Positions 2,821 to 58,577 of a DNA stretch of 64,000 nt are shown here, piece by piece. The notes below the pieces were generated by a model. It ran no database searches and was not told the DNA's origin. It worked only from the letters and a program-made list of their open reading frames with translations. Position 1 is the first letter of the stretch; each line of letters opens with the position of its first letter. The stretch is from assembly GCF_001194135.2 (NCBI RefSeq), contig NC_068983.1, forward strand, positions 21,711,804 to 21,775,803, written 5' to 3'. Position numbers and translations under genes: made by a program. The DNA is from Octopus bimaculoides (Eukaryota).

Positions 2821-3004
2821 CCCACACATCGTAAAGACCCCTTTCAGTCATGAATAGCCATGAGATTGCACCTAGAAAGTTCCCCTCCAAGATATAAGTC
2901 CAGGGAAGGTTGTTTATGGAAGACCAGCAGTCACCCATGCATACCAGCCTCTCTTTTCCATGCCACCGATAATATTCAAGGGAAAGGCAAATGTCAAATG
3001 TGTG

Positions 3005-3590
3005 TGTGTGTGTATACCCGTCAGAGTGTAAGTATCTTGAGAGAAAAGCTGAACATTAGAAGCATCAGTTGTGGTGTGCAAGAGAGACGATTGCGCTGGT
3101 ATGGACATGTGGTGAGAATGGATGAGGATAGCTGCATGAAAAAGTGCCACACCCTAACAGTTGAGGGAACCCGTGGAAGAGGTAGGCCCAGGAAGACCTG
3201 GGCTGAGGTGGTGAGGCAAGACCTTCGTACATTGGGCCTCACCGAGGCGATGACTACGGACCGAGACCTTTGGAAATGGGCTGTGCGTGAGAAGACCCGG
3301 CAAGCCAAGTAAGATCGTTNNNNNNNNNNNNNNNNNNNNNNNNNNNNNNNNNNNNNNNNNNNNNNNNNACCATTTCGAGCGTGGCCATTTTCGTGCGGGT
3401 GACACGTAAAAACACCCACTACACTCTCTGAGTGGTTGGCGTTAGGAAGGGCATCCAGCTGTAGAAACTCTGCCAAATTAGACTGGAGCCTGGTGTTGCC
3501 ATCCGGTTTCACCAGTCCTCAGTCAAATCGTCCAACCCATGCTAGCATGGAAAGCGGACGTTAAACGATGATGATGATGATGATGATGAT

Positions 3591-23039: not shown

Positions 23040-24760
23040 ATATTGTCACTGCTGCAACAGAGTAGTATGAGATGCTATCTGCAAAAGCAATTCACAATAT
23101 CAATGCATGTCGTGGATATATAGTAGTAAAATATTGAATCACTGAAGCGAATAAATGCTGTCAAAAGATGTTCATGCTACAGTAGCAAATTAGCAACAGA
23201 ATCTATAAATAGTAATAATAGGCATTGTTGACATGTATCATCACTACAATAAACAAATAGCAACCTTATTGCAACAGATATTATCTATAATAGCAACAAG
23301 AATTACCAACAGAGGTCTTATTCATCATCATCATCGTTTAACGTCCGCTTTCCATGCTAGCATGGGTTGGACGACTTGACTGAGGACTGGTGAAACCGGA
23401 TGGCAACACCAGGCTCCAATCTAAATTTGGCAGAGTTTCTAGAGCTGGATGCCCTTCCTAACGCCAACCACTCAGAGAGTGTAGTAGGTGCTTTTACGTG
23501 TCCCCTGCACGAAGGCCAGTCAGGCGATACTGGCAATGGCCACGCTCGAAATGGTGTCTTTTATGTGCCACCNNNNNNNNNNNNNNNNNNNNNNNNNNNN
23601 NNNNNNNNNNNNNNNNNNNNNNNNNNNNNNNNNNNNNNNNNNNNNNNNNNNNNNNNNNNNNNNNNNNNNNNNNNNNNNNNNNNNNNNNNNNNNNNNNNNN
23701 NNNNNNNNNNNNNNNNNNNNNNNNNNNNNNNNNNNNNNNNNNNNNNNNNNNNNNNNNNNNNNNNNNNNNNNNNNNNNNNNNNNNNNNNNNNNNNNNNNNN
23801 NNNNNNNNNNNNNNNNNNNNNNNNNNNNNNNNNNNNNNNNNNNNNNNNNNNNNNNNNNNNNNNNNNNNNNNNNNNNNNNNNNCTTGGTCAGTAGTCATCG
23901 CCTCGGTGAGGCCCAATGTACGAAGGTCTTGCCTCACCACCTCAGCCCAGGTCTTCCTGGGCCTACCTCTTCCACGGGTTCCCTCAACTGTTAGGGTGTG
24001 GCACTTTTTCATGCAGCTATCCTCATCCATTCTCACCACATGTCCATACCAGCGCAATCGTCTCTCTTGCACACCACAACTGATGCTTCTAATGTTCAGC
24101 TTTTCTCTCAAGATACTTACACTCTGACGGGTATTCACATTGACATTACACATCCAACGGAGCATACTGGCTTCATTCCTTGCGAGCTTACGTGTAGTAA
24201 CAAAAATAGTTATAGATATTATAGACAGCGGTAACAGAGACAGTTTCACATATATCATTATGAATGCAACAGAAAAGCAAATCAACAGATGCTATCTATA
24301 ATAGCAACAGGAATTACCAGTAAATGTCTTATTACAATAATAAAATCGCAACAGATGTTATAGACAATAGTAACAGACAGTATTACACATATTATTATTA
24401 TGACAGTAACAGAATAACAAATCATTGTAGCAAACAGATGTTATCTATAATAGTAATAAATATTATCAACAGATGTGATACTATATGCAGTGAATGGTAA
24501 CAGATGAAATCTACAATAGCAAGTGGAAATATCAACACATATCATCCATAATGAAACAGAACATCAAATACAATCCACAATAAGCAACAGGCCTTATCAA
24601 CAGATGCAATACATCAGTAATAAAATAGCGACATGTAATTGCCAACAGTAACAAACAAAATCAACAGATGTGATTACGATAGTAACACAACAGCAAATAA
24701 TTATAGTAATTGATGCTACCCACAGTAGCAATTGACAATTCCAACAGATGCCGTCAATGC
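23040..24760. repeat. Degenerate minisatellite with (C/A)AACAGATG..ATCTATAATAG core, interrupted by the RTE insertion
   Basis: Core recurs near 23270, 24284, 24349, 24433, 24467, 24498, 24598, 24661 and 24742. Confidence 0.65.
23322..24193 (-). mobile_element. 5'-truncated RTE LINE, same young family as 3005-3592
   Basis: Same ORF2 end peptide; (CAT)n tail at about 23322-23335; gap falls in the internal tandem array. Confidence 0.88.
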
Positions 24761-28560: not shown

Positions 28561-28893
28561 CACTTCTGGCAAATATTTTAAAATCAACCTCATTGTCATT
28601 TTAACGTCCACTTTTCTGTGCTAGCTTGGGTCAGACAGAGTTTAAAGTGGTACAGATTTTCTATGGTTGGATGTCTATCCTGCTGCCAAACCTCACCTGT
28701 TTCCATGCAGCGTAATATCTCCCATGATCAGACAGACATGCTTCCATGAAAGATTGGAAATAAATGACACCACTTGTATAACAATGGCGCTTGTTTACAG
28801 CTATCATGTTATGTCAAGATAAGCAAACATCAACACACATGCATACATGCAACCATGTATACAGACATACATACATGTATAAATATATACATA

Positions 28894-29817
28894 CTGTGAC
28901 TGCTGAGGACATGCGTAAGCTCGCAAGGAATGAAGCCAGTATGCTCCGCTGGATGTGTAATGTCAGTGTGCATACCCATCAGAGTGTAAGTATCTTGAGA
29001 GAAAAGCTGAACATTAGAAGCATCAGTTGTGGTGTGCAAGAGAGACGATTGCGCTGGTATGGACATGTGGTGAGAATGGATGAGGATAGCTGCATGAAAA
29101 AGTGCCNNNNNNNNNNNNNNNNNNNNNNNNNNNNNNNNNNNNNNNNNNNNNNNNNNNNNNNNNNNNNNNNNNNNNNNNNNNNNNNNNNNNNNNNNNNNNN
29201 NNNNNNNNNNNNNNNNNNNNNNNNNNNNNNNNNNNNNNNNNNNNNNNNNNNNNNNNNNNNNNNNNNNNNNNNNNNNNNNNNNNNNNNNNNNNNNNNNNNN
29301 NNNNNNNNNNNNNNNNNNNNNNNNNNNNNNNNNNNNNNNNNNNNNNNNNNNNNNNNNNNNNNNNNNNNNNNNNNNNNNNNNNNNNNNNNNNNNNNNNNNN
29401 NNNNNNNNNNNNNNNNNNNNNNNNNNNNNNNNNNNNNNNNNNNNNNNNNNNNNNNNNNNNNNNNNNNNNNNNNNNNNNNNNNNNNNNNNNNNNNNNNNNN
29501 NNNNNNNNTGACTGGCCTTCATAGGATTTTTCGAGCGAGATCGCTGCAAGTGCTGCTGGACTGGCTCTTGTGCAGGTGGCACATAAAAGACACCATTTTG
29601 AGCGTGGCCGTTGCCAGTACCGCCTGACTGGCCCTCGTGCAGGTGACACATAAAAGTACCCACTACACTCTCGGAGTGGTTGGCGTTAGGAAGGGCATCC
29701 AGCTGTAGAAACTCTGCCAAATTAGATTGGAGCCTGGTGTTGCCATCCGGTTTCACCAGTCTTCAGTCAAATCGTCCAACCCATGGAAAGCAGACGTTAA
29801 ACGATGATGATGATGAT
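28894..29817 (+). mobile_element. 5'-truncated RTE LINE, same family, with long target-site duplication
   Basis: MRKLARNEASMLRWMC...RWYGHVVRM; 3' UTR and (GAT)n tail; 41-bp exact direct repeat at 28845-28885 and 29826-29866. Confidence 0.88.
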
Positions 29818-46104: not shown

Positions 46105-46177
46105 TTGTTTTTTTCTTTCTCTATCTCATTCTTCAAACTTTGTTCTGCTTCATCGGGGTTATCAGGATCAAGCTTTC
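46105..46177 (-). CDS. KIF6: KIF6 internal exon, phase 1-2: (G)KLDPDNPDEAEQSLKNEIEKEKN(K)
   Basis: Acceptor aaacctttttcAG and donor GTAAGA; 73 bp. Resembles recalled KIF6 PDQQEEKLRSQLEEEKR. Phases match both neighbours. Confidence 0.88.
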
Positions 46178-47364: not shown

Positions 47365-47594
47365 TTACTCTACTCTTTTTACTCTTTTACTTGTTTCAGT
47401 CATTTGACTGCAGCCATGCTGGAGCACCGCCTTTAGTCGAACAAATCAACCCCAGGACTTATTCTTTGTAAGCCTAGTACTTATTCTATCGGTCTCTTTT
47501 GCCGAACCACTAAGTTACGGGGACGTAAACACACCAGCATCGGTTGTCAAGCGATGTTGGGGGGACAAACACAGACACACAAAGACACACACAC

Positions 47595-47663
<69 letters not shown>

Positions 47664-47827
47664 CAACGGGCTTCTTTAAGTTTCTGTCTACCAAATCCAC
47701 TCACAAGGCTTTGGTCGGCCCGAAGCTATAGTAGAAGACACTTGCCCAAGGTGCCACGCAGTGGGATTGAACCTAGAACCATGTGGTTTGTAAGCAAGCC
47801 ACTTACCACACACCCACTCCTGCGCCT
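47365..47827 (-). mobile_element. Full-length SINE A
   Basis: Tail (tactctttt)n to head ccactcctgcgcc. Confidence 0.88.
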
Positions 47828-48050
47828 AGAGAATTATTTTTTAATTATTAGAGAATTATTAGAATTTTAGAATTATTACAAAGCTGTGCAGTTTTAGATG
47901 AGATGTATCTTCAATTGAGCTGATCCCTCACCAAATCCTTGATACTTATTGTATTGACACCAGATCAATCAGAATATGAAATTATCTGCAGAAAGATTTG
48001 AACTCAGATTAAAAGAAAGGAGATATCAAGTATGTGGATATGTAGATATA

Positions 48051-48452: not shown

Positions 48453-49418
48453 AGATATAGGTTATGCAGAGGAGATATCAGAAATGTGGAGGAGATAAAA
48501 GACATGCAGAGGAGATATAGGAGATGAGACAAAATATTGTAAACTATTTAGTCTTCTCTTTTAATATTAGCAGCAATCATCAGAAGAATTATGCTGATGG
48601 TTTCTTTTGACAGAATGATAAAAGCCAACATTGTATGATGCCAAGAACATTCAGACTATTCTTTATGTCACAAATGTCAAGAAATGTCATCAAAAATGTC
48701 AGCAAAAGAAAGATATCTTTGCTGCTAAGAATAAACATCTCAACAAAAGTTTTCAAAGCTGTGTAGTGTATTTGACCAAAATAACTATGTAACTACACAA
48801 CTGATGAAGTATTTTCACATACATTTGCATCTCTTTGTTTCTTTGTCACTGCTATTGTTAATAAGATAAACAGGGTCTTCTATATGGTTGCTAGAACTGC
48901 TAGACATAACAGTCAAATTTCTCTCATATTGCACTCTAACATGATGTCATCTGAGATGACATCATGTTAGGGCACATTTTGTTTCTTTATCTTTTCTATT
49001 TACTTTTTTTTTAACTTTTTTACTTGTTTCAGTCATTTGGCTGCAGCCATGCTGGAGCATCACCTTTTATAGTCAAGCAAATCAACCCCAGAGCTTATTC
49101 TTTGTAAGCCGAGTACTCATTCTATTGATCTCTTTTGCCAAACCACTAAGTTACGGGGACGCAAACACACCAGCATTGGTTTCCTAGCGATGCTGGGGGA
49201 CAAACAGACACACACACATACATCGCCATGATAGATCGCTGACCACTACACACATTATTTTTCTCTCCTTTTTTTTCTCTCCTTGTTTCTTTCTGTGTTC
49301 CTTTCTGTTGAAAGTGTAGGCTTGAAACGTTAAAGACTTTCTCTATTCCCGAGCATTATACATCCATTTGTTGTCTACACAACCTGTCTTCGTCTGTTGT
49401 TTTTTCGTGAATTCTCCC

Positions 49419-50095
49419 TAATCCCCTGAGATTGCAGATAATATTTCTGAATCTCTTTGATTCTTTAGATGTGCTGGCCTCCTGATAATTAATCGATATT
49501 AATTAATATATGACTAATTACCAGATTTTATAATAATATTTTACCCATTGCCCATGTTCTCATACTGAATATATAAGATGCAGTAAATATTTTCTGCAGA
49601 TATATTCCTGGAATTAGAGCGCCAAAATGAAGACTTTTGAATTTTACCATTAAGTTGTAATTAGCAGAACCATATGCACGCGCACCCATGGCGGTGGGCA
49701 ACTCTGTATACGATTCTGATGATTACGGTTAAATTGCAAATCAGGCTGATGAGGAATAAACAAATAGTAAGAATTTGTTAAATCCGAAACTAGTTCCTGT
49801 TTAATAATGCTTTTTTAGGTGATTTTAAATGTCTTGCCCGCTCACGTTTTTGGTATGCTGCTATATTTCATGTTGAGAACAATTTAGGTCTTAATAGACA
49901 CAAGATGTGATCTATTTCTAGCGCATTAATTGTCCACGTTAGTGGTCGACGTTATTTTTTGAAAAATGTACCTTAATCCCCTGAGATTGCAGATAATATT
50001 TCTGAATCTCTTTGATTCTTTAGATGTGCTGTCCTCCTGATAATTAATCGATATTAAATAATATATGACTAATTACCAGATTTTATAATAATATT
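49419..50095 (+). mobile_element. Non-coding 555-bp unit with 122-bp direct terminal repeats carrying the hammerhead motif (retrozyme/Penelope-like non-autonomous element)
   Basis: 49419-49540 and 49974-50095 are direct repeats with 2 mismatches. No long ORF; the hammerhead lies between the repeats; TA run at the 3' flank. Confidence 0.6.
49742..49799 (+). ncRNA. Type I hammerhead-ribozyme-like motif
   Basis: CAGG-CTGATGA-[GGA..AACAAAT/ATTTGTT..TCC]-GAAA-CTAG-T-T-CCTG. Intact core; stem I CAGG/CCTG; stem II GGA/TCC plus a 7-bp hairpin; palindromic stem III ACTAGT; predicted GUU site after 49795. Confidence 0.75.
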
Positions 50096-50461
50096 ATATA
50101 GATATATATATATATATGCGACGGGCTTCTTCCAGTTTCCGTCTATCAAATCCACTCACAAGGCTTTGGTTGACCTGAGGCTATAGTAGAAGACACTTGC
50201 CCATGGTGTCACACAGTGGGACTGAACCCAGGACCACGTGGTTGGTAAGCAAGCTATTTACCACATTGCCAGCCACTCCTGCGCCTATTGGTAATAAAAT
50301 AAACAGGGTCTTCTATATGGTTGCTAGAACTGCTAGACATAACAGTCAAATTTCTCTCATATTGTGCCCTATCATGATGCCATGCATATACATTTTAGTA
50401 AACGAAGACAAATTGTCATAGATATAAGAATATATTATAAAATATTTGGTTCTGAACTCAC

Positions 50462-50512
50462 CTTGTAGTCCACACTGTAACCTGTGCTGTTCCATTTTAG
50501 ACTTCAACTGAT
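50462..50512 (-). CDS. KIF6: KIF6 (kinesin-9) internal stalk exon, phase 1-1: (N/D)QLKSKMEQHRLQCGLQ(G)
   Basis: Acceptor ttctttctttctcAG and donor GTGAGT; 51 bp. Aligns by eye to recalled human KIF6 GHLKEEITQRHIQQVALG. Its last G joins GA of the next exon to give Gly. Confidence 0.88.
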
Positions 50513-50569
50513 CTGAGAAAGAAAGAATCAATAGGGAGACATCGCATACAGAAGAGGGGACGATGTTAA

Positions 50570-51240
50570 AAGCAATGGTGGTCATTGTGATGATGATGAT
50601 GATAATGGTGGTGGTGGTGATGATGATGGTGATGATGATGATGATGACAACAACAGTTGTCGTAAGGGCAGTGACAGTGATAATGAGGATGATGAACTGC
50701 GCTATCATCATAAAGATGATGATCATAATGATAAAAGGTGACTATGAAAAATGATGGCAATGGCAATGATGATGATGATGATGATGAGGAGGAGGAGGAG
50801 GAGGAGGAGGAGGAGGAGGACAATGACTGTAATGAAGATAATGATAATGATGATGCTGAACAGCACCATAAAGGTGATGATCGTAATGATGAAGGTGACA
50901 TTGAAAATGATGATGATGATGATGATGATAATGGTGGTGGTGGTGGTAGTGGTGGGGGGGGAGTGATGGTGGGGGTGATGATGACGAGGATGATGATGGG
51001 GGTAGTGCTGGTGGTGGTGGTGACAGAGGTTGGTGACGGTGGTGGTAGTGAGGATGATGATGATGACAATGAAGGGGAGGAGGGTTACAATGAGGATGAT
51101 AGTGATGGTGGTGGTGGTGGAGGTGGTGGCGGCAGCGGCGGCGGCGGCGGAAGTGTCGGTGGTGTTGGTGGTGGTAGAAATCACAACAATAATGATAACG
51201 ATGATGGTGATGATGTCTGTTATAACTATCACCACCATCT
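50570..51240. repeat. Long compound trinucleotide microsatellite just upstream of the KIF6 50512 acceptor
   Basis: (GAT)/(GAG)/(GGT)/(GGC) tracts; all its ORFs are homopolymeric. Confidence 0.95.
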
Positions 51241-51989
51241 TTACAAATATGAAGAATGAATAAATAAATAAATAAAAAAGTACATGAAGTAACACAATGA
51301 CAGTCAGACAACATTTCCACCTCCACGTGGTGCCACCAGGAAGGATTCATTACTTCAGAAGCGATCCATTCCAAACATCCAACATGATAACAAAGACTCG
51401 TTTTACACATTGACAACATAATCTTGTATTTCAAGCAGCAAATATACTATGATAGTGAAATATCCACTTATCAGTGAGTTATGTTATAACTTAGAGGATA
51501 AGGTGTGTTAAGTCAAAGATGTAACCCCTTACATAGATGTTTGGTATGGTAGAAATAGCAGGTAAATCTTCCTTAGATCACACCTAGCCATCTTTAAAAG
51601 GGAAGGAGTCATATGTATTTAGAATACTGTTGTGCTAATGGAAGATAAACTGAGACATGTTTTTATTCGGTTTCCTTGCATGTCTCCACTGTCCTGTTTT
51701 TGTTCCCAACTTTGACCTTCCATAAATCCAAAACTTTATTTTGGTATTTATGAGAGCAACTGTCTTCGAAGACTCATATTGTTGTTGAATGCTCGAAATG
51801 AGGAGTAGATAGACAGCTGACAACTGATGAAGGGTCATTCTTTGTGTTACTTGTCCTGTTTTCCATTTTTTTCTCTCGTTGCTTGCATATTTAACTCATT
51901 TGTTTTTGTACTTCATATTGTTTACTGTTAGTGACGTCCTGTACCCATAAATGCATATATATTTATACACACACACACATAGATATATA

Positions 51990-52232
51990 TATATGTGCAT
52001 GTATATGTATATATCTAGGTATGTGTGTCCTTGCGTTTGTCCCCACCATCACTGCTTGACAACTGGTGTTGGTGTGTTTATGTCCCCATGGCTTAGCAGT
52101 TCAGTAAAAGAAACCAACAGAATAAGTTCTAGGTTTAAAAAAACATTAAGTCCTGGGGTCAATTTATTCAACTAAAACCCTTCAAGGCGGTGCTCCAGCA
52201 TGGCCACAGTCAACTGACTAAAACAAGTAAAA
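51990..52232 (+). mobile_element. SINE A, 3' half
   Basis: cttgacaactggtgttggtgtg...aaacaagtaaaa. Confidence 0.75.
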
Positions 52233-56759: not shown

Positions 56760-58577
56760 ATTATATTTACAGATAAGGAGGGAATGAGACAGAGATAGAT
56801 CTTGTTTTGGTTGGCAGGAGAAACAGACAGTATTTGAGAGATGTGAAGACAATACCAGGGGAGTTGCAGCACAGGTTGGTGGTTGTTGACTTGGATAAGA
56901 AGAAAGTTAAAAAGTGTGTGAGAAAGGGAATGGTTCAGAGTGGAAACTGAAGGAAGAAGAAACAAGAGCAAGGTTTGAAGAAAGAGTTGGGGAGTTGGTA
57001 AGCATTGATGCACTGGATTTCTGAGTCTTTCAAAGAAGGGGTACTAAAGGGATGTGATGAAGTTTGTGGAAGGACGAAGGGTAGGAGAGATTAAGGAGAT
57101 ACATGGTGGTCGAATGAAGAGGTGAGGGATGTGATAGCGAGGAAAAAGGAGGGGCACAATGCTTTATATAATAATAGGACTGAACAAATGAAAGCCAGGT
57201 ATTATAACATGAAAAATCGTGCAAAGAGGGTGGTTGCGAGACCTATGAGGAAGGAGGCTGAAGAGAGATAGAGTGTTTGGGTTTATTAAATCAATGAAAA
57301 AAAGATGGCAGAGATGTTGAGAGAGGAAGATGCATGAGTGGGGAGTGATGGAAGGTTGAATTTTAGTGAGAAAGACAGGTGAAGAGTTTGGAAGGAACAT
57401 ATGGAGGGAATTATGAATGAGGAGAATGAATGGGATCAGAGGGTGGAAGTTGCTGTGGTGGATAGGCCAGTGGAGATGGTTAGTCAGGAAGAAGTAGTGG
57501 AGGCAATGAAGGAAATGGAAACAGGAAAGGCAGCTGGTCCAGCAGAAGTAAGTGTGGAAAGGATAACTGCAAGTGGAGAGATAGGGATTGTTGTGATGAT
57601 GGAGCTCTGCCTGGGTGTGCTGGATGGAAGAGGAATGCCAGATGATTGGGCACTAAGTGTGGTGGTACCGATCTTCAAGGGGAAGGGGGATGCAATGAGT
57701 TGTGGAGTGTATAGCGGAGTTGTGGGGCATATAGGGGAGTTGTGGAGTGTATGGTTGTAGGGTGTATATTGGAGCATGCAATGAAGATAGTGGAAAGGGT
57801 GTTGGGCAGGAGAATTCAGAAGGGGGTGAATGTGAATGAGATACAATTTGGTTTTATGCCAGGAAGGGGGACAATAGATGCAGTGTTCATTATAGAGAGA
57901 TTGCAAGAAGAATATCGAGATAAGGAGAAGAAGTATATGTGCTTCGTTGATCTGGAGAAGGCATTTGATAGGATTCCAAGAAAGGTGGTTGAGTGGGCAC
58001 TGAGAAAGAGAGGTGTACTAATGGTAGTAGTGAAAGCAGTGATGAGTTTGTATGAGGGGGTAGAGACAAGAGTTAGAATTGGATGAGAGCTGTTGGAGAA
58101 GTTTGCGGTGAAAGTTGGTGTGCACCAGGGATCTGTGTTGTCACCGTTGTTGTTTGCAATAATAGTTCATGCAGTGACGGAGAGTGCAAAAGAGGGATTG
58201 ATAATGGAGATACTGTATGCAGATGACCTTGTTTGATAAGAGAGGAATTGAGGACTTGATGGGGATGCTGGGGCTGGAGGAATAGGTGGAATGGCTGGCA
58301 ATGGCAAATGGAGTGTGGTGGTATGGGTATGAGTTGAGGAGCAATGAGGAAGTGTTTGCGTTTGAGGTAAATGGATTGCAAAAGCAAGGTAGAGCGAGGA
58401 AAAAGTGGAGGGGACAGATGGAGAAGGAGATTGGGAGGGTTGGCTTAAGAACAGAGGATACACAAAACCAGGCAAGATGATGTGAGGGTGGTAGATATGG
58501 CATTGAAGTAGATCTGGCCACCCCTGTTAACGGGGACAGAACCCAGATTTGAAATACTGAATGATGATGATGATGAT
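56760..58577 (+). mobile_element. Degenerate RTE-clade LINE ORF2 (APE endonuclease C-terminus, RT, 3' end)
   Basis: TEIDLVLVGRRNRQYLRDVKTIPGELQHRLVV; QFGFMPGRGTIDAVF; FVDLEKAFDR; GVHQGSVLSPLLF; YADDLV; WYG..; (GAT)n tail. Stops and frameshifts present. Confidence 0.92.

What the first reader, a model, noticed from the sequence alone, without database searches (positions are those of the whole stretch)
49419..50095. Retrozyme-like element: 555-nt non-coding unit with an intact type I hammerhead and 122-bp terminal redundancy
Seen: direct repeats at 49419-49540 and 49974-50095 (2 mismatches), i.e. 1.22 copies of a 555-bp unit with no ORF. It contains CAGG-CTGATGA-GGA(ATA)AACAAAT-agtaaga-ATTTGTT(AAA)TCC-GAAA-CTAG-TT-CCTG at 49742-49799: all core nucleotides present, stems I and II paired, self-complementary stem III (ACTAGT), predicted cleavage after U49795 (GUU). 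It is inserted in the TA/CA tract of a SINE, antisense to KIF6. Established: minimal type I hammerheads with palindromic stem III occur in Penelope-like elements and in animal non-LTR retrozymes, where they can act as dimers and yield circular RNAs. Inference: a greater-than-unit, permuted insertion is what reverse transcription of a circular or multimeric RNA would leave, so this may be a cephalopod retrozyme family. I cannot confirm that it is undescribed.
Basis: partly seen in the sequence, partly recalled or inferred. Interest (0 to 1): 0.85.

Follow-up and report, generated by a model that had tools for sequence, protein, structure and literature searches.

The report
Hammerhead-bearing retroelement copy inside a SINE
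A young, non-coding 872-bp insertion in the microsatellite of a SINE carries a complete hammerhead-ribozyme motif and a 122-bp terminal redundancy, which fits the known Penelope-like/retrozyme class of animal retroelements; it is probably an ordinary member of that class, and whether it represents a family could not be tested.

Summary
The sequence observation holds. Direct repeats 49419-49540 and 49974-50095 differ at 2 of 122 positions and lie 555 bp apart. The motif at 49742-49799 has every hammerhead core nucleotide, a 4-bp helix I, a stable helix II (-4.9 kcal/mol, G10.1-C11.1) and a palindromic ACUAGU helix III.

Simulation argues against chance. In 46 Mb of composition-matched sequence, 18 loci matched a relaxed descriptor, and none had helix II at or below -3 kcal/mol. 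Rfam, however, reports no hammerhead family here even at E<=10.

Alignment to an intact neighbouring SINE shows the inserted DNA is 49224-50095 (872 bp). It therefore includes 195 bp unrelated to the "unit", with a short tandem repeat at its outer end.

Only one hammerhead is present, and it lies outside the repeat. The "555-nt unit" is an inference: a tandem of 5'-truncated 3' ends of a longer Penelope-like element would look the same.

No related DNA could be reached, so copy number, core conservation and the KIF6/cephalopod context remain untested.

Best reading (0.55): a Penelope-class, hammerhead-bearing retroelement copy, immobile at this locus. It would be a new member of a known kind, of modest interest.

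The parts
49224..50095 (+). Whole DNA inserted into the SINE's internal (CA)n/(TA)n tract (872 bp)
   Evidence: The intact SINE copy 47376-47587 + 47640-47828 (halves 52 bp apart) aligns to 49009-49222 and 50095-50287.
49224..49418 (.). Extra 195-bp segment unrelated to the unit. It holds a 24-nt filler, a short CA run, and a pyrimidine-rich tandem repeat (TTTTTCTCTCCTTGT)x2.5 at 49258-49294.
   Evidence: Local and semi-global alignments to the unit score no better than shuffles. TRF row. No other copy in the window.
49419..49540 (+). Upstream partial copy R: the 3'-terminal 122 nt of the element
   Evidence: 120 of 122 positions identical to 49974-50095, spacing 555.
49541..50095 (+). The 555-nt stretch from the tandem junction to the 3' end (the putative unit); GC 33.5%
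   Evidence: RNA fold z = -2.87 on + and -2.47 on -. No coding signal.
49742..49799 (+). Type I hammerhead motif. Helix I: 49742-45 with 49796-99. Core CUGAUGA: 49746-52. Helix II: 49753-85 (3 bp, 3x3 internal loop, 7 bp, 7-nt loop). G12-A14 and A15.1: 49786-89. Palindromic ACUAGU (A15.1...U16.1): 49789-94. U17 = 49795, with predicted cleavage between 49795 and 49796.
   Evidence: Sequence. Only descriptor match in the window; helix II -4.9 kcal/mol; none comparable in 46 Mb of simulation. Helices I and II appear in the MFE folds of the 83-nt slice and of the 555-nt RNA. No Rfam hit.
50037..50079 (+). 3'-proximal imperfect hairpin followed by a 16-nt A/U tail (50080-50095); duplicated at 49482-49524 in R
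   Evidence: Self inverted match 49482-49524 and the MFE of the 555-nt RNA. A role in reverse-transcriptase recognition or priming is inference.
49974..50095 (+). Downstream copy R' of the 122-nt terminal sequence, abutting the SINE (TA)n
49009..49223 (-). Host SINE, 3' half ending in (CA)n (minus-strand element)
   Evidence: 87% identity to 47376-47587.
50096..50283 (-). Host SINE, (TA)n and 5' half
   Evidence: 86.5% identity to 47640-47828.
50470..50520 (-). Likely exon of the host gene (51 nt, CAG acceptor, GTGAGT donor), about 375 bp from the insertion. Its phase fits a second candidate exon at 46105-46177 (-).
   Evidence: Only one frame is open. Gene identity not confirmed.

Best explanation
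This is a copy of a non-coding retroelement of the Penelope-like (PLE)/non-LTR-retrozyme class, inserted in + orientation into the (CA)n/(TA)n microsatellite of a SINE. Shown: it is an insertion, it is non-coding, its last 122 nt are repeated 555 bp upstream, and it carries a complete type I hammerhead motif. Inferred mechanism: an endonuclease nick in the (TA)n tract primed reverse transcription on the A/U-rich 3' tail of the element RNA (…UAUAAUAAUAUU). The reverse transcriptase copied 555 nt and then continued for another 122 nt from the same 3' end. It did so either because the template was circular or multimeric, or because it jumped to a second RNA. The 5' junction was then closed with 195 bp of unrelated DNA, by a template switch, by filler capture, or because an older insertion already lay there. 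The hammerhead has only a 1-bp helix III closed by the palindrome CUAG. As published for PLE and amphibian hammerheads, it should cleave (after U49795) only when two copies pair through ACUAGU/ACUAGU. With one hammerhead, this locus can neither release a unit-length RNA nor form a cis dimer, so it is most likely a dead-end 'monomer-plus' copy. I cannot tell whether the 555 nt are a true non-autonomous unit (a retrozyme) or the 5'-truncated 3' end of a longer autonomous PLE; I weight the two about equally. The 2 mismatches in 122 nt between the repeats suggest an event a few million years old if published octopus rates apply. That dating rests on the unverified taxon.
For: The motif is complete and unique in the window. 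In 46 Mb of matched random sequence, 18 loci matched a relaxed descriptor and none had helix II <= -3 kcal/mol; the candidate has -4.9. It shows features that Cervera & de la Pena list as non-random hallmarks and that no descriptor run required jointly: a G10.1-C11.1 pair, palindromic 15.2-16.2/loop 3, a short 4-bp helix I and an enlarged helix II (PMC4209133). The insertion is proven by alignment to the intact SINE. PLEs insert preferentially into (TA)n and (CA)n and form partial tandems with a 5'-truncated upstream copy (PMC8557442). Circular RNA has been proposed as a template for more-than-unit copies (PMC4209133; PMC7229834). Published retrozyme consensus lengths span 51-972 bp and monomers are common. 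GC is 33.5%, below the <45-50% limit. PLEs make up 6.83% of the Octopus vulgaris genome in 190 families, and 235 Rfam hammerheads were reported in the giant squid. The 555-nt RNA folds better than shuffles, and the hammerhead forms its own domain in that fold.
Against: No Rfam hammerhead model matches, even at E<=10 on a 141-nt slice. There is one sequence only, so no covariation and no evidence of a family. All routes to related DNA failed. The hammerhead is not in the repeated part, whereas PLE hammerheads sit in the pseudo-LTRs. Neither the insertion ends nor the tandem junction coincide with the cleavage site. The helix II architecture (33 nt with a 3x3 internal loop) is atypical, as is U at position 17. 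[quoted passage not shown] The local fold z-score is not significant (-0.81), and the minus strand of the unit also folds well (-2.47). The 195-bp segment has a tail-like tandem repeat on the minus strand, which would fit an opposite-strand element. My descriptor was written after seeing the candidate.
Confidence: 0.55

Rival explanations
1. Chance look-alike. The 872 bp are one minus-strand non-LTR retroposon fragment, or a retrocopy of a transcript from a tandemly repeated locus. Its 3' end would be the purine-rich (ACAAGGAGAGAAAAA)x2.5 repeat next to the SINE's (TG)n. The plus-strand hammerhead motif would then be antisense to the element RNA and without function.
For: A tail-like tandem repeat lies at 49258-49294, at the outer end of the insert. 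No Rfam hammerhead hit. The local fold z-score is not significant. Both strands of the unit fold about equally well. By my estimate a multi-gigabase genome would hold some chance matches to relaxed descriptors (18 per 46 Mb).
Against: None of the 18 simulated matches had a stable helix II, and the candidate adds a G-C closing pair and a palindromic loop 3. The partial copy lies upstream in + orientation, as target-primed reverse transcription predicts. The tail-like repeat is followed by about 35 nt that are not tail. No LINE or SINE in the window shares sequence with the insert.
Confidence: 0.25
2. DNA-level event without an RNA intermediate. A break in the unstable microsatellite was repaired with captured filler DNA, and a 555-bp tandem duplication was later truncated at the (TA)n tract, leaving 122 bp.
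For: Microsatellites are fragile. The left junction contains a 24-nt filler between two CA runs. No target-site duplication is recognisable, and no poly(A).
Against: It requires several independent events. It does not explain the complete hammerhead motif or why the repeat ends exactly at the (TA)n junction in an A/U-rich tail. PLE insertions in microsatellites also lack recognisable target-site duplications (PMC8557442).
Confidence: 0.1
3. An active, circle-forming retrozyme locus: a locus that itself yields 555-nt circular RNAs.
For: The motif and the greater-than-unit arrangement. The RNA is more structured than shuffles.
Against: Only one cleavage site exists in the locus, so two cuts per unit are impossible. 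Helix III cannot form in cis. No tandem array.
Confidence: 0.05
4. A box C/D snoRNA-like gene, because CUGAUGA resembles box C.
For: Weak sub-threshold Rfam hits to C/D families (sR7 13.2 bits, snoZ188 12 bits).
Against: No CUGA box D or terminal stem lies within 120 nt downstream. Scores are far below gathering thresholds. The motif is antisense to the putative host gene.
Confidence: 0.01

Closest known systems
Minimal and palindromic-helix-III type I hammerheads of Penelope-like elements (Cervera & de la Pena 2014, PMC4209133)
   Same: Type I topology, full catalytic core, short 4-bp helix I, enlarged helix II, G10.1-C11.1, a palindromic 15.2-16.2/loop 3 that implies action as a dimer, and host DNA that is a retroelement arranged as a partial tandem.
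   Different: No RT/GIY-YIG ORF is present. The hammerhead is not inside the repeated (pseudo-LTR-like) part. [quoted passage not shown] Helix II is 33 nt with a 3x3 internal loop. Position 17 is U.
Metazoan non-LTR retrozymes (Cervera & de la Pena 2020, PMC7229834; Li et al. 2026, bioRxiv 10.64898/2026.07.22.740005)
   Same: Non-coding, low GC, type I hammerhead, head-to-tail redundancy, and a size within the 51-972 bp range of published consensus sequences. Monomeric derivatives are common, and a PLE origin or PLE mobilisation has been proposed.
   Different: Only 1.22 copies and a single hammerhead instead of a tandem array. At 555 nt it exceeds the 170-400 nt typical of invertebrates. Family, expression and circularity are untested. 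An extra 195 bp lies at the 5' junction.
Hammerhead-bearing SINE-like and satellite repeats (Schistosoma Sm-alpha, newt satellite 2, cave-cricket pDo500), cited from my own knowledge and from PMC7229834
   Same: Short non-coding repeats carrying type I hammerheads with a weak helix III that work best as dimers.
   Different: Those are abundant, tandem or SINE-like families with demonstrated cleavage. Here there is one copy and no assay.
Plant LTR retrozymes (PMC4918200)
   Same: Non-autonomous and non-coding, with a direct terminal repeat and a hammerhead.
   Different: Plant elements have type III hammerheads inside both LTRs, a primer-binding site and polypurine tract, 4-bp target-site duplications and GC >55%. 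None of these is present here.

Membership tests
Hammerhead ribozyme, type I | Catalytic core C3-U4-G5-A6-N7-G8-A9, G12-A13-A14, A15.1-U16.1, and H17 (not G) | tested here: met
   CUGAUGA at 49746-52, GAA at 49786-88, A49789-U49794, U49795.
Hammerhead ribozyme, type I | Helices I and II base-paired, open end in helix I | tested here: met
   CAGG/CCUG (4 bp). Helix II has 3+7 bp at -4.9 kcal/mol. Both appear in MFE folds.
Hammerhead ribozyme, type I | Match to a curated covariance model (Rfam hammerhead families) | tested here: not met
   No hammerhead hit at E<=10 on 6 kb or on 141 nt, and none at gathering threshold in the window. The long helix II and the missing helix III hairpin probably explain this, but I could not show it.
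Hammerhead ribozyme, type I | Conservation and covariation among homologues | not testable with these tools
   No second copy in the window and no related DNA in any collection.
Hammerhead ribozyme, type I | Self-cleavage | not testable with these tools
   Needs in vitro transcription of monomer and dimer constructs.
Non-LTR retrozyme | Tandem repeat with a hammerhead in each unit (at least two cleavage sites) | tested here: not met
   1.22 copies with one hammerhead; the repeat does not include it. This corresponds at best to the 'monomer' derivatives of Li et al..
Non-LTR retrozyme | Non-coding, low GC, a few hundred nt | tested here: met
   Longest ORF 57 aa with no domain. GC 33.5%. 555 nt lies within 51-972 bp but above the 170-400 nt range.
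Non-LTR retrozyme | Multicopy family; expressed as linear and circular RNA | not testable with these tools
   No genome or transcriptome of the source organism is available.
Autonomous Penelope-like element | ORF with RT and GIY-YIG endonuclease between pseudo-LTRs | tested here: not met
   No RT or GIY-YIG signal in the insert, and no GIY-YIG-like motif anywhere in the window. The only RT in the window is LINE-type (58216 YADD; RVT_1 at 57742-58086).
Penelope-like element insertion (any, including truncated or non-autonomous) | Partial tandem with a 5'-truncated upstream copy; microsatellite target; no poly(A); no clear target-site duplication | tested here: met
   R lies upstream of the 555-nt copy, with a shared 3' end. 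The target is a (CA)n/(TA)n tract. Criteria are from PMC8557442.
Penelope-like element insertion (any, including truncated or non-autonomous) | Hammerhead located in the pseudo-LTR | tested here: not met
   The hammerhead lies 201 nt after R and 174 nt before R'. A longer upstream copy would have included it, so the failure may be incidental.
Plant-type LTR retrozyme / LTR element | TG...CA LTRs, primer-binding site and polypurine tract, short target-site duplication, hammerhead in the LTR | tested here: not met
   R starts TAATCC and ends AATATT. The flanks TCTCCC and ATATAG are not duplicated.

The most novel reading that the evidence does not exclude
The 555 nt are the true unit of an undescribed cephalopod non-LTR retrozyme family. 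It would be larger than typical invertebrate retrozymes and have an unusually long, internally looped helix II. It would propagate through circular RNA that is primed at its A/U-rich tract by (TA)n targets inside SINEs and is mobilised by the abundant octopus Penelope elements.
Probability: 0.2. Interest if true: 0.5.

Novelty: new member of a known kind. Interest (0 to 1): 0.27.

Why it matters
If a genome-wide search confirms it, this would extend hammerhead-bearing PLE/retrozyme elements to cephalopods. PLEs are reported to make up about 7% of an octopus genome, yet I found no paper in the searched library that describes their ribozymes. The locus would also be a clean natural example in which the insertion ends and the tandem junction do not coincide with the ribozyme cleavage site. 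That bears on whether circular, multimeric or uncleaved RNAs serve as templates. It would not change current understanding: hammerheads in PLEs and retrozymes are well established in many animal phyla, including molluscs. This particular copy is probably inert and lies antisense to its likely host gene.

Tried and rejected
1. **Rfam scans** of 6 kb, of 141 nt and of the whole window found no hammerhead. The sub-threshold miRNA hits are TA/CA microsatellite hairpins.
2. **Other copies in the window:** blastn with word size 9 found none.
3. **Public DNA scans** with CTGATGAGGA-N20-40-TCCGAAACTAGT found nothing in JGI metagenomes or IMG/VR. These collections are unlikely to hold cephalopod DNA, so the result says little.
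4. **Spurious-ORF route:** I used ORFs of the unit to fish contigs out of the protein collection. The 57-aa ORF is not on record and has no homologue. Two unrelated window ORFs of 150 and 137 aa are also absent. The source genome is therefore simply not in the collection, and the negative is uninformative.
5. **Host-gene route:** a 40-aa product of two predicted exons found no homologue, so KIF6 and the taxon stay unverified. No kinesin motor motifs occur in the window.
6. **LINE reverse-transcriptase route** to sample related genomes: the best hits are <=75% identical. The two contigs fetched (L001, L002) contain neither the window's SINE nor the insert, so they are not close relatives.
7. 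**Homology between the 195-bp segment and the unit,** on either strand, scored no better than shuffles or random window pieces.
8. **Other element types:** the termini and inverted-repeat output rule out LTR, TIR and Helitron readings. The snoRNA reading fails because there is no box D.
9. **Assembly artefact:** rejected, because there is no gap nearby and R and R' have different right-hand neighbours.
10. **Supplements:** those of the PLE paper are not held. The octopus repeat paper's supplement contains no sequences.
11. **Cofold of two motif copies:** the active double-hammerhead cannot be represented as a nested structure, so the result was not used.

Full report
**What is in the sequence**

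The two direct repeats are real. Positions 49419-49540 and 49974-50095 are 122 nt long, differ at two positions and lie 555 bp apart. Similarity stops abruptly at both ends.

Helix I is CAGG/CCUG. The core is CUGAUGA. Helix II is GGA/UCC, then a 3x3 internal loop, 7 bp and a 7-nt loop. Then come GAA, A15.1, the palindrome CUAG, U16.1 and U17, so cleavage would follow U49795.

The 555-nt stretch has no ORF longer than 57 aa. None of its ORFs has a Pfam domain or a homologue.

**Is the motif more than chance?**

A descriptor scan finds this site as the only match on either strand of the window. The descriptor required the core, helix I of at least 4 bp, a closed helix II, an A-N(2-8)-U helix III, and H17.

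Composition-matched simulated windows gave 0 strict matches in 400. Relaxed descriptors gave 0.0075-0.04 matches per window.

In 46 Mb of Markov-1 sequence, 18 loci matched a relaxed descriptor. None had a helix II at or below -3 kcal/mol. The candidate has -4.9 kcal/mol, a G10.1-C11.1 closing pair and a palindromic loop 3.

The G10.1-C11.1 pair and the palindromic loop 3 are among the hallmarks that Cervera & de la Pena gave for non-random PLE hammerheads. They also describe a short helix I and an enlarged helix II in PLE minimal hammerheads (PMC4209133).

Against this, Rfam reports no hammerhead family at E<=10, even when only 141 nt are searched. The local fold is no more stable than shuffles (z = -0.81). 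My descriptor was also written after seeing the candidate, and real genomes contain more hairpins than a Markov model does. On balance I judge the motif probably genuine, but it is not validated.

**What the surroundings show**

The element sits inside a minus-strand SINE. An intact copy of that SINE lies 1.5 kb away, at 47376-47828, with its two halves separated by a 52-bp (CA)n(TA)n tract. Those halves align to 49009-49222 and 50095-50287.

The inserted DNA is therefore 49224-50095, or 872 bp, not the 677 bp reported. The additional 195 bp (49224-49418) resemble the unit on neither strand. This segment begins with a 24-nt filler between two CA runs. It also carries a 2.5-copy tandem repeat, TTTTTCTCTCCTTGT, at 49258-49294. 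Read on the minus strand, that repeat looks like the 3' tail of a non-LTR retroposon.

The 99-nt repeat flanking the SINE (48852-48950 and 50285-50383) has a simple explanation. The SINE landed in the second copy of a roughly 144-bp tandem duplication.

Two well-formed, phase-compatible minus-strand exons lie at 50470-50520 and 46105-46177, on either side of the element. The hammerhead strand is therefore antisense to a likely host gene. Their 40-aa product found no homologue, so neither 'KIF6' nor 'cephalopod' could be verified.

**How it most likely arose**

PLEs insert preferentially into (TA)n and (CA)n tracts. They lack recognisable target-site duplications there and typically form partial tandems with a 5'-truncated upstream copy (PMC8557442). 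Circular RNA has been proposed as the template for such more-than-unit copies of PLEs and retrozymes (PMC4209133; PMC7229834).

The + strand arrangement here fits that scheme. Priming would occur at the (TA)n tract on the A/U-rich tail that ends the element. That tail is preceded by a 43-nt hairpin at 50037-50079. Synthesis would proceed through 555 nt and then through another 122 nt starting again from the same 3' end.

Neither the insertion ends nor the tandem junction (49540/49541) coincide with the predicted cleavage site. If the hammerhead defined the ends of a linear template, they should coincide. The template was therefore circular, multimeric or uncleaved, or else the hammerhead plays no part in defining RNA ends. 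This step is inference.

Only the 3' end is defined by the data, so '555-nt unit' is not established. A reverse transcriptase that copied the last 555 nt of a long PLE RNA and then jumped to a second 3' end would leave the same structure.

The 555-nt RNA is more structured than shuffles (z = -2.87), and the hammerhead forms its own domain in that fold. The minus strand also folds well (z = -2.47), however.

**What this locus can do**

Very little. It has a single hammerhead, outside the repeat, with a helix III of 1 bp. Published PLE and amphibian hammerheads of this type cleave only as dimers, and weakly in vitro. The locus cannot excise a unit-length RNA. It matches the 'monomer' derivatives that Li et al. 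regard as non-transposing offspring.

The two mismatches between R and R' correspond to roughly 2 million years, with a wide error. This uses the rate implied by the O. vulgaris repeat paper (Jukes-Cantor distance 0.09 = about 25 My) and holds only if the taxon is right.

**Family-level evidence could not be obtained**

- The window holds no second copy.
- Pattern scans of JGI metagenomes and IMG/VR were empty.
- Neither the unit's ORFs nor unrelated window ORFs are on record in the protein collection.
- A LINE reverse-transcriptase bait returned only relatives <=75% identical. The contigs fetched for two of those hits (L001, L002) lack the window's SINE, so they are not close relatives.

**Comparison with what is known, and verdict**

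The element works like, and most probably belongs to, the PLE/non-LTR-retrozyme class.

- It meets the hammerhead core and helix criteria and the PLE insertion-architecture criteria.
- It fails the retrozyme criterion of a tandem array with at least two ribozymes.
- It fails the PLE criteria of an RT-EN ORF and of a hammerhead within the pseudo-LTR.
- It fails the Rfam model test.

PLEs are reported at 6.83% of the O. vulgaris genome in 190 families. Rfam-level hammerheads were counted in the giant squid (235). A hammerhead-bearing PLE relic in a cephalopod intron would therefore be unsurprising.

I found no paper in the searched library describing cephalopod retrozymes or PLE ribozymes. If confirmed, this would be a new member of a known kind. 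Confidence in the PLE-class reading is 0.55, and in a chance motif inside an unrelated insert 0.25. Interest is 0.27.

Noticed in passing
48834-49000 and 50285-50383: A 99-nt direct repeat (93% identity) flanks the SINE, and a 23-nt repeat (48834-56 and 48978-49000) precedes each copy. The SINE evidently inserted into the second copy of a roughly 144-bp tandem duplication. A 28-nt inverted repeat (48925-52 and 48954-81) follows the first copy.
   Followed up: partly
49258-49308: A pyrimidine-rich short tandem repeat (TTTTTCTCTCCTTGT x2.5, then a 12-mer x2.1) lies at the outer end of the extra 195-bp segment. On the minus strand it looks like a retroposon 3' tail, which raises the possibility of a separate, opposite-strand insertion.
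   Followed up: partly
50560-51300: About 750 bp of imperfect trinucleotide repeats (TGA/TGG/GAG) give long low-complexity ORFs in several frames, directly beside the candidate exon at 50470-50520.
   Followed up: no
57401-58230 (+): A degraded LINE reverse transcriptase (RVT_1, E = 2.7e-09, YADD at 58216) is split over three frames. The closest proteins in the collection are <=75% identical, and the named ones are from Acropora corals.
   Followed up: partly
2860-3312 (+), 23494-24285 (-), 28791-29627 (+): Three copies of the same LINE C-terminal ORF fragment (…RRLRWYGHVVRMDEDSCMKKC…) are present, each interrupted by or next to N gaps.
   Followed up: no
whole window: At least 15 copies or fragments of the same SINE are present, each with an internal (CA)n(TA)n tract. 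The window also has 7,050 N, and the gaps inspected in the ORF listing abut microsatellites, which suggests a short-read scaffold assembly.
   Followed up: partly
47583-47744 and 51934-52038: Sub-threshold Rfam 'miRNA' hits (mir-297, mir-3149, mir-1277; 31-39 bits against gathering scores of 81-100) fall on TA/CA microsatellite hairpins and are artefacts.
   Followed up: yes
46105-46177 (-) and 50470-50520 (-): Two phase-compatible candidate exons encode QLKSKMEQHRLQCGLQ-G-KLDPDNPDEAEQSLKNEIEKEKN. No protein in the 5.8-billion-sequence collection shares even three 5-residue words with this product.
   Followed up: yes
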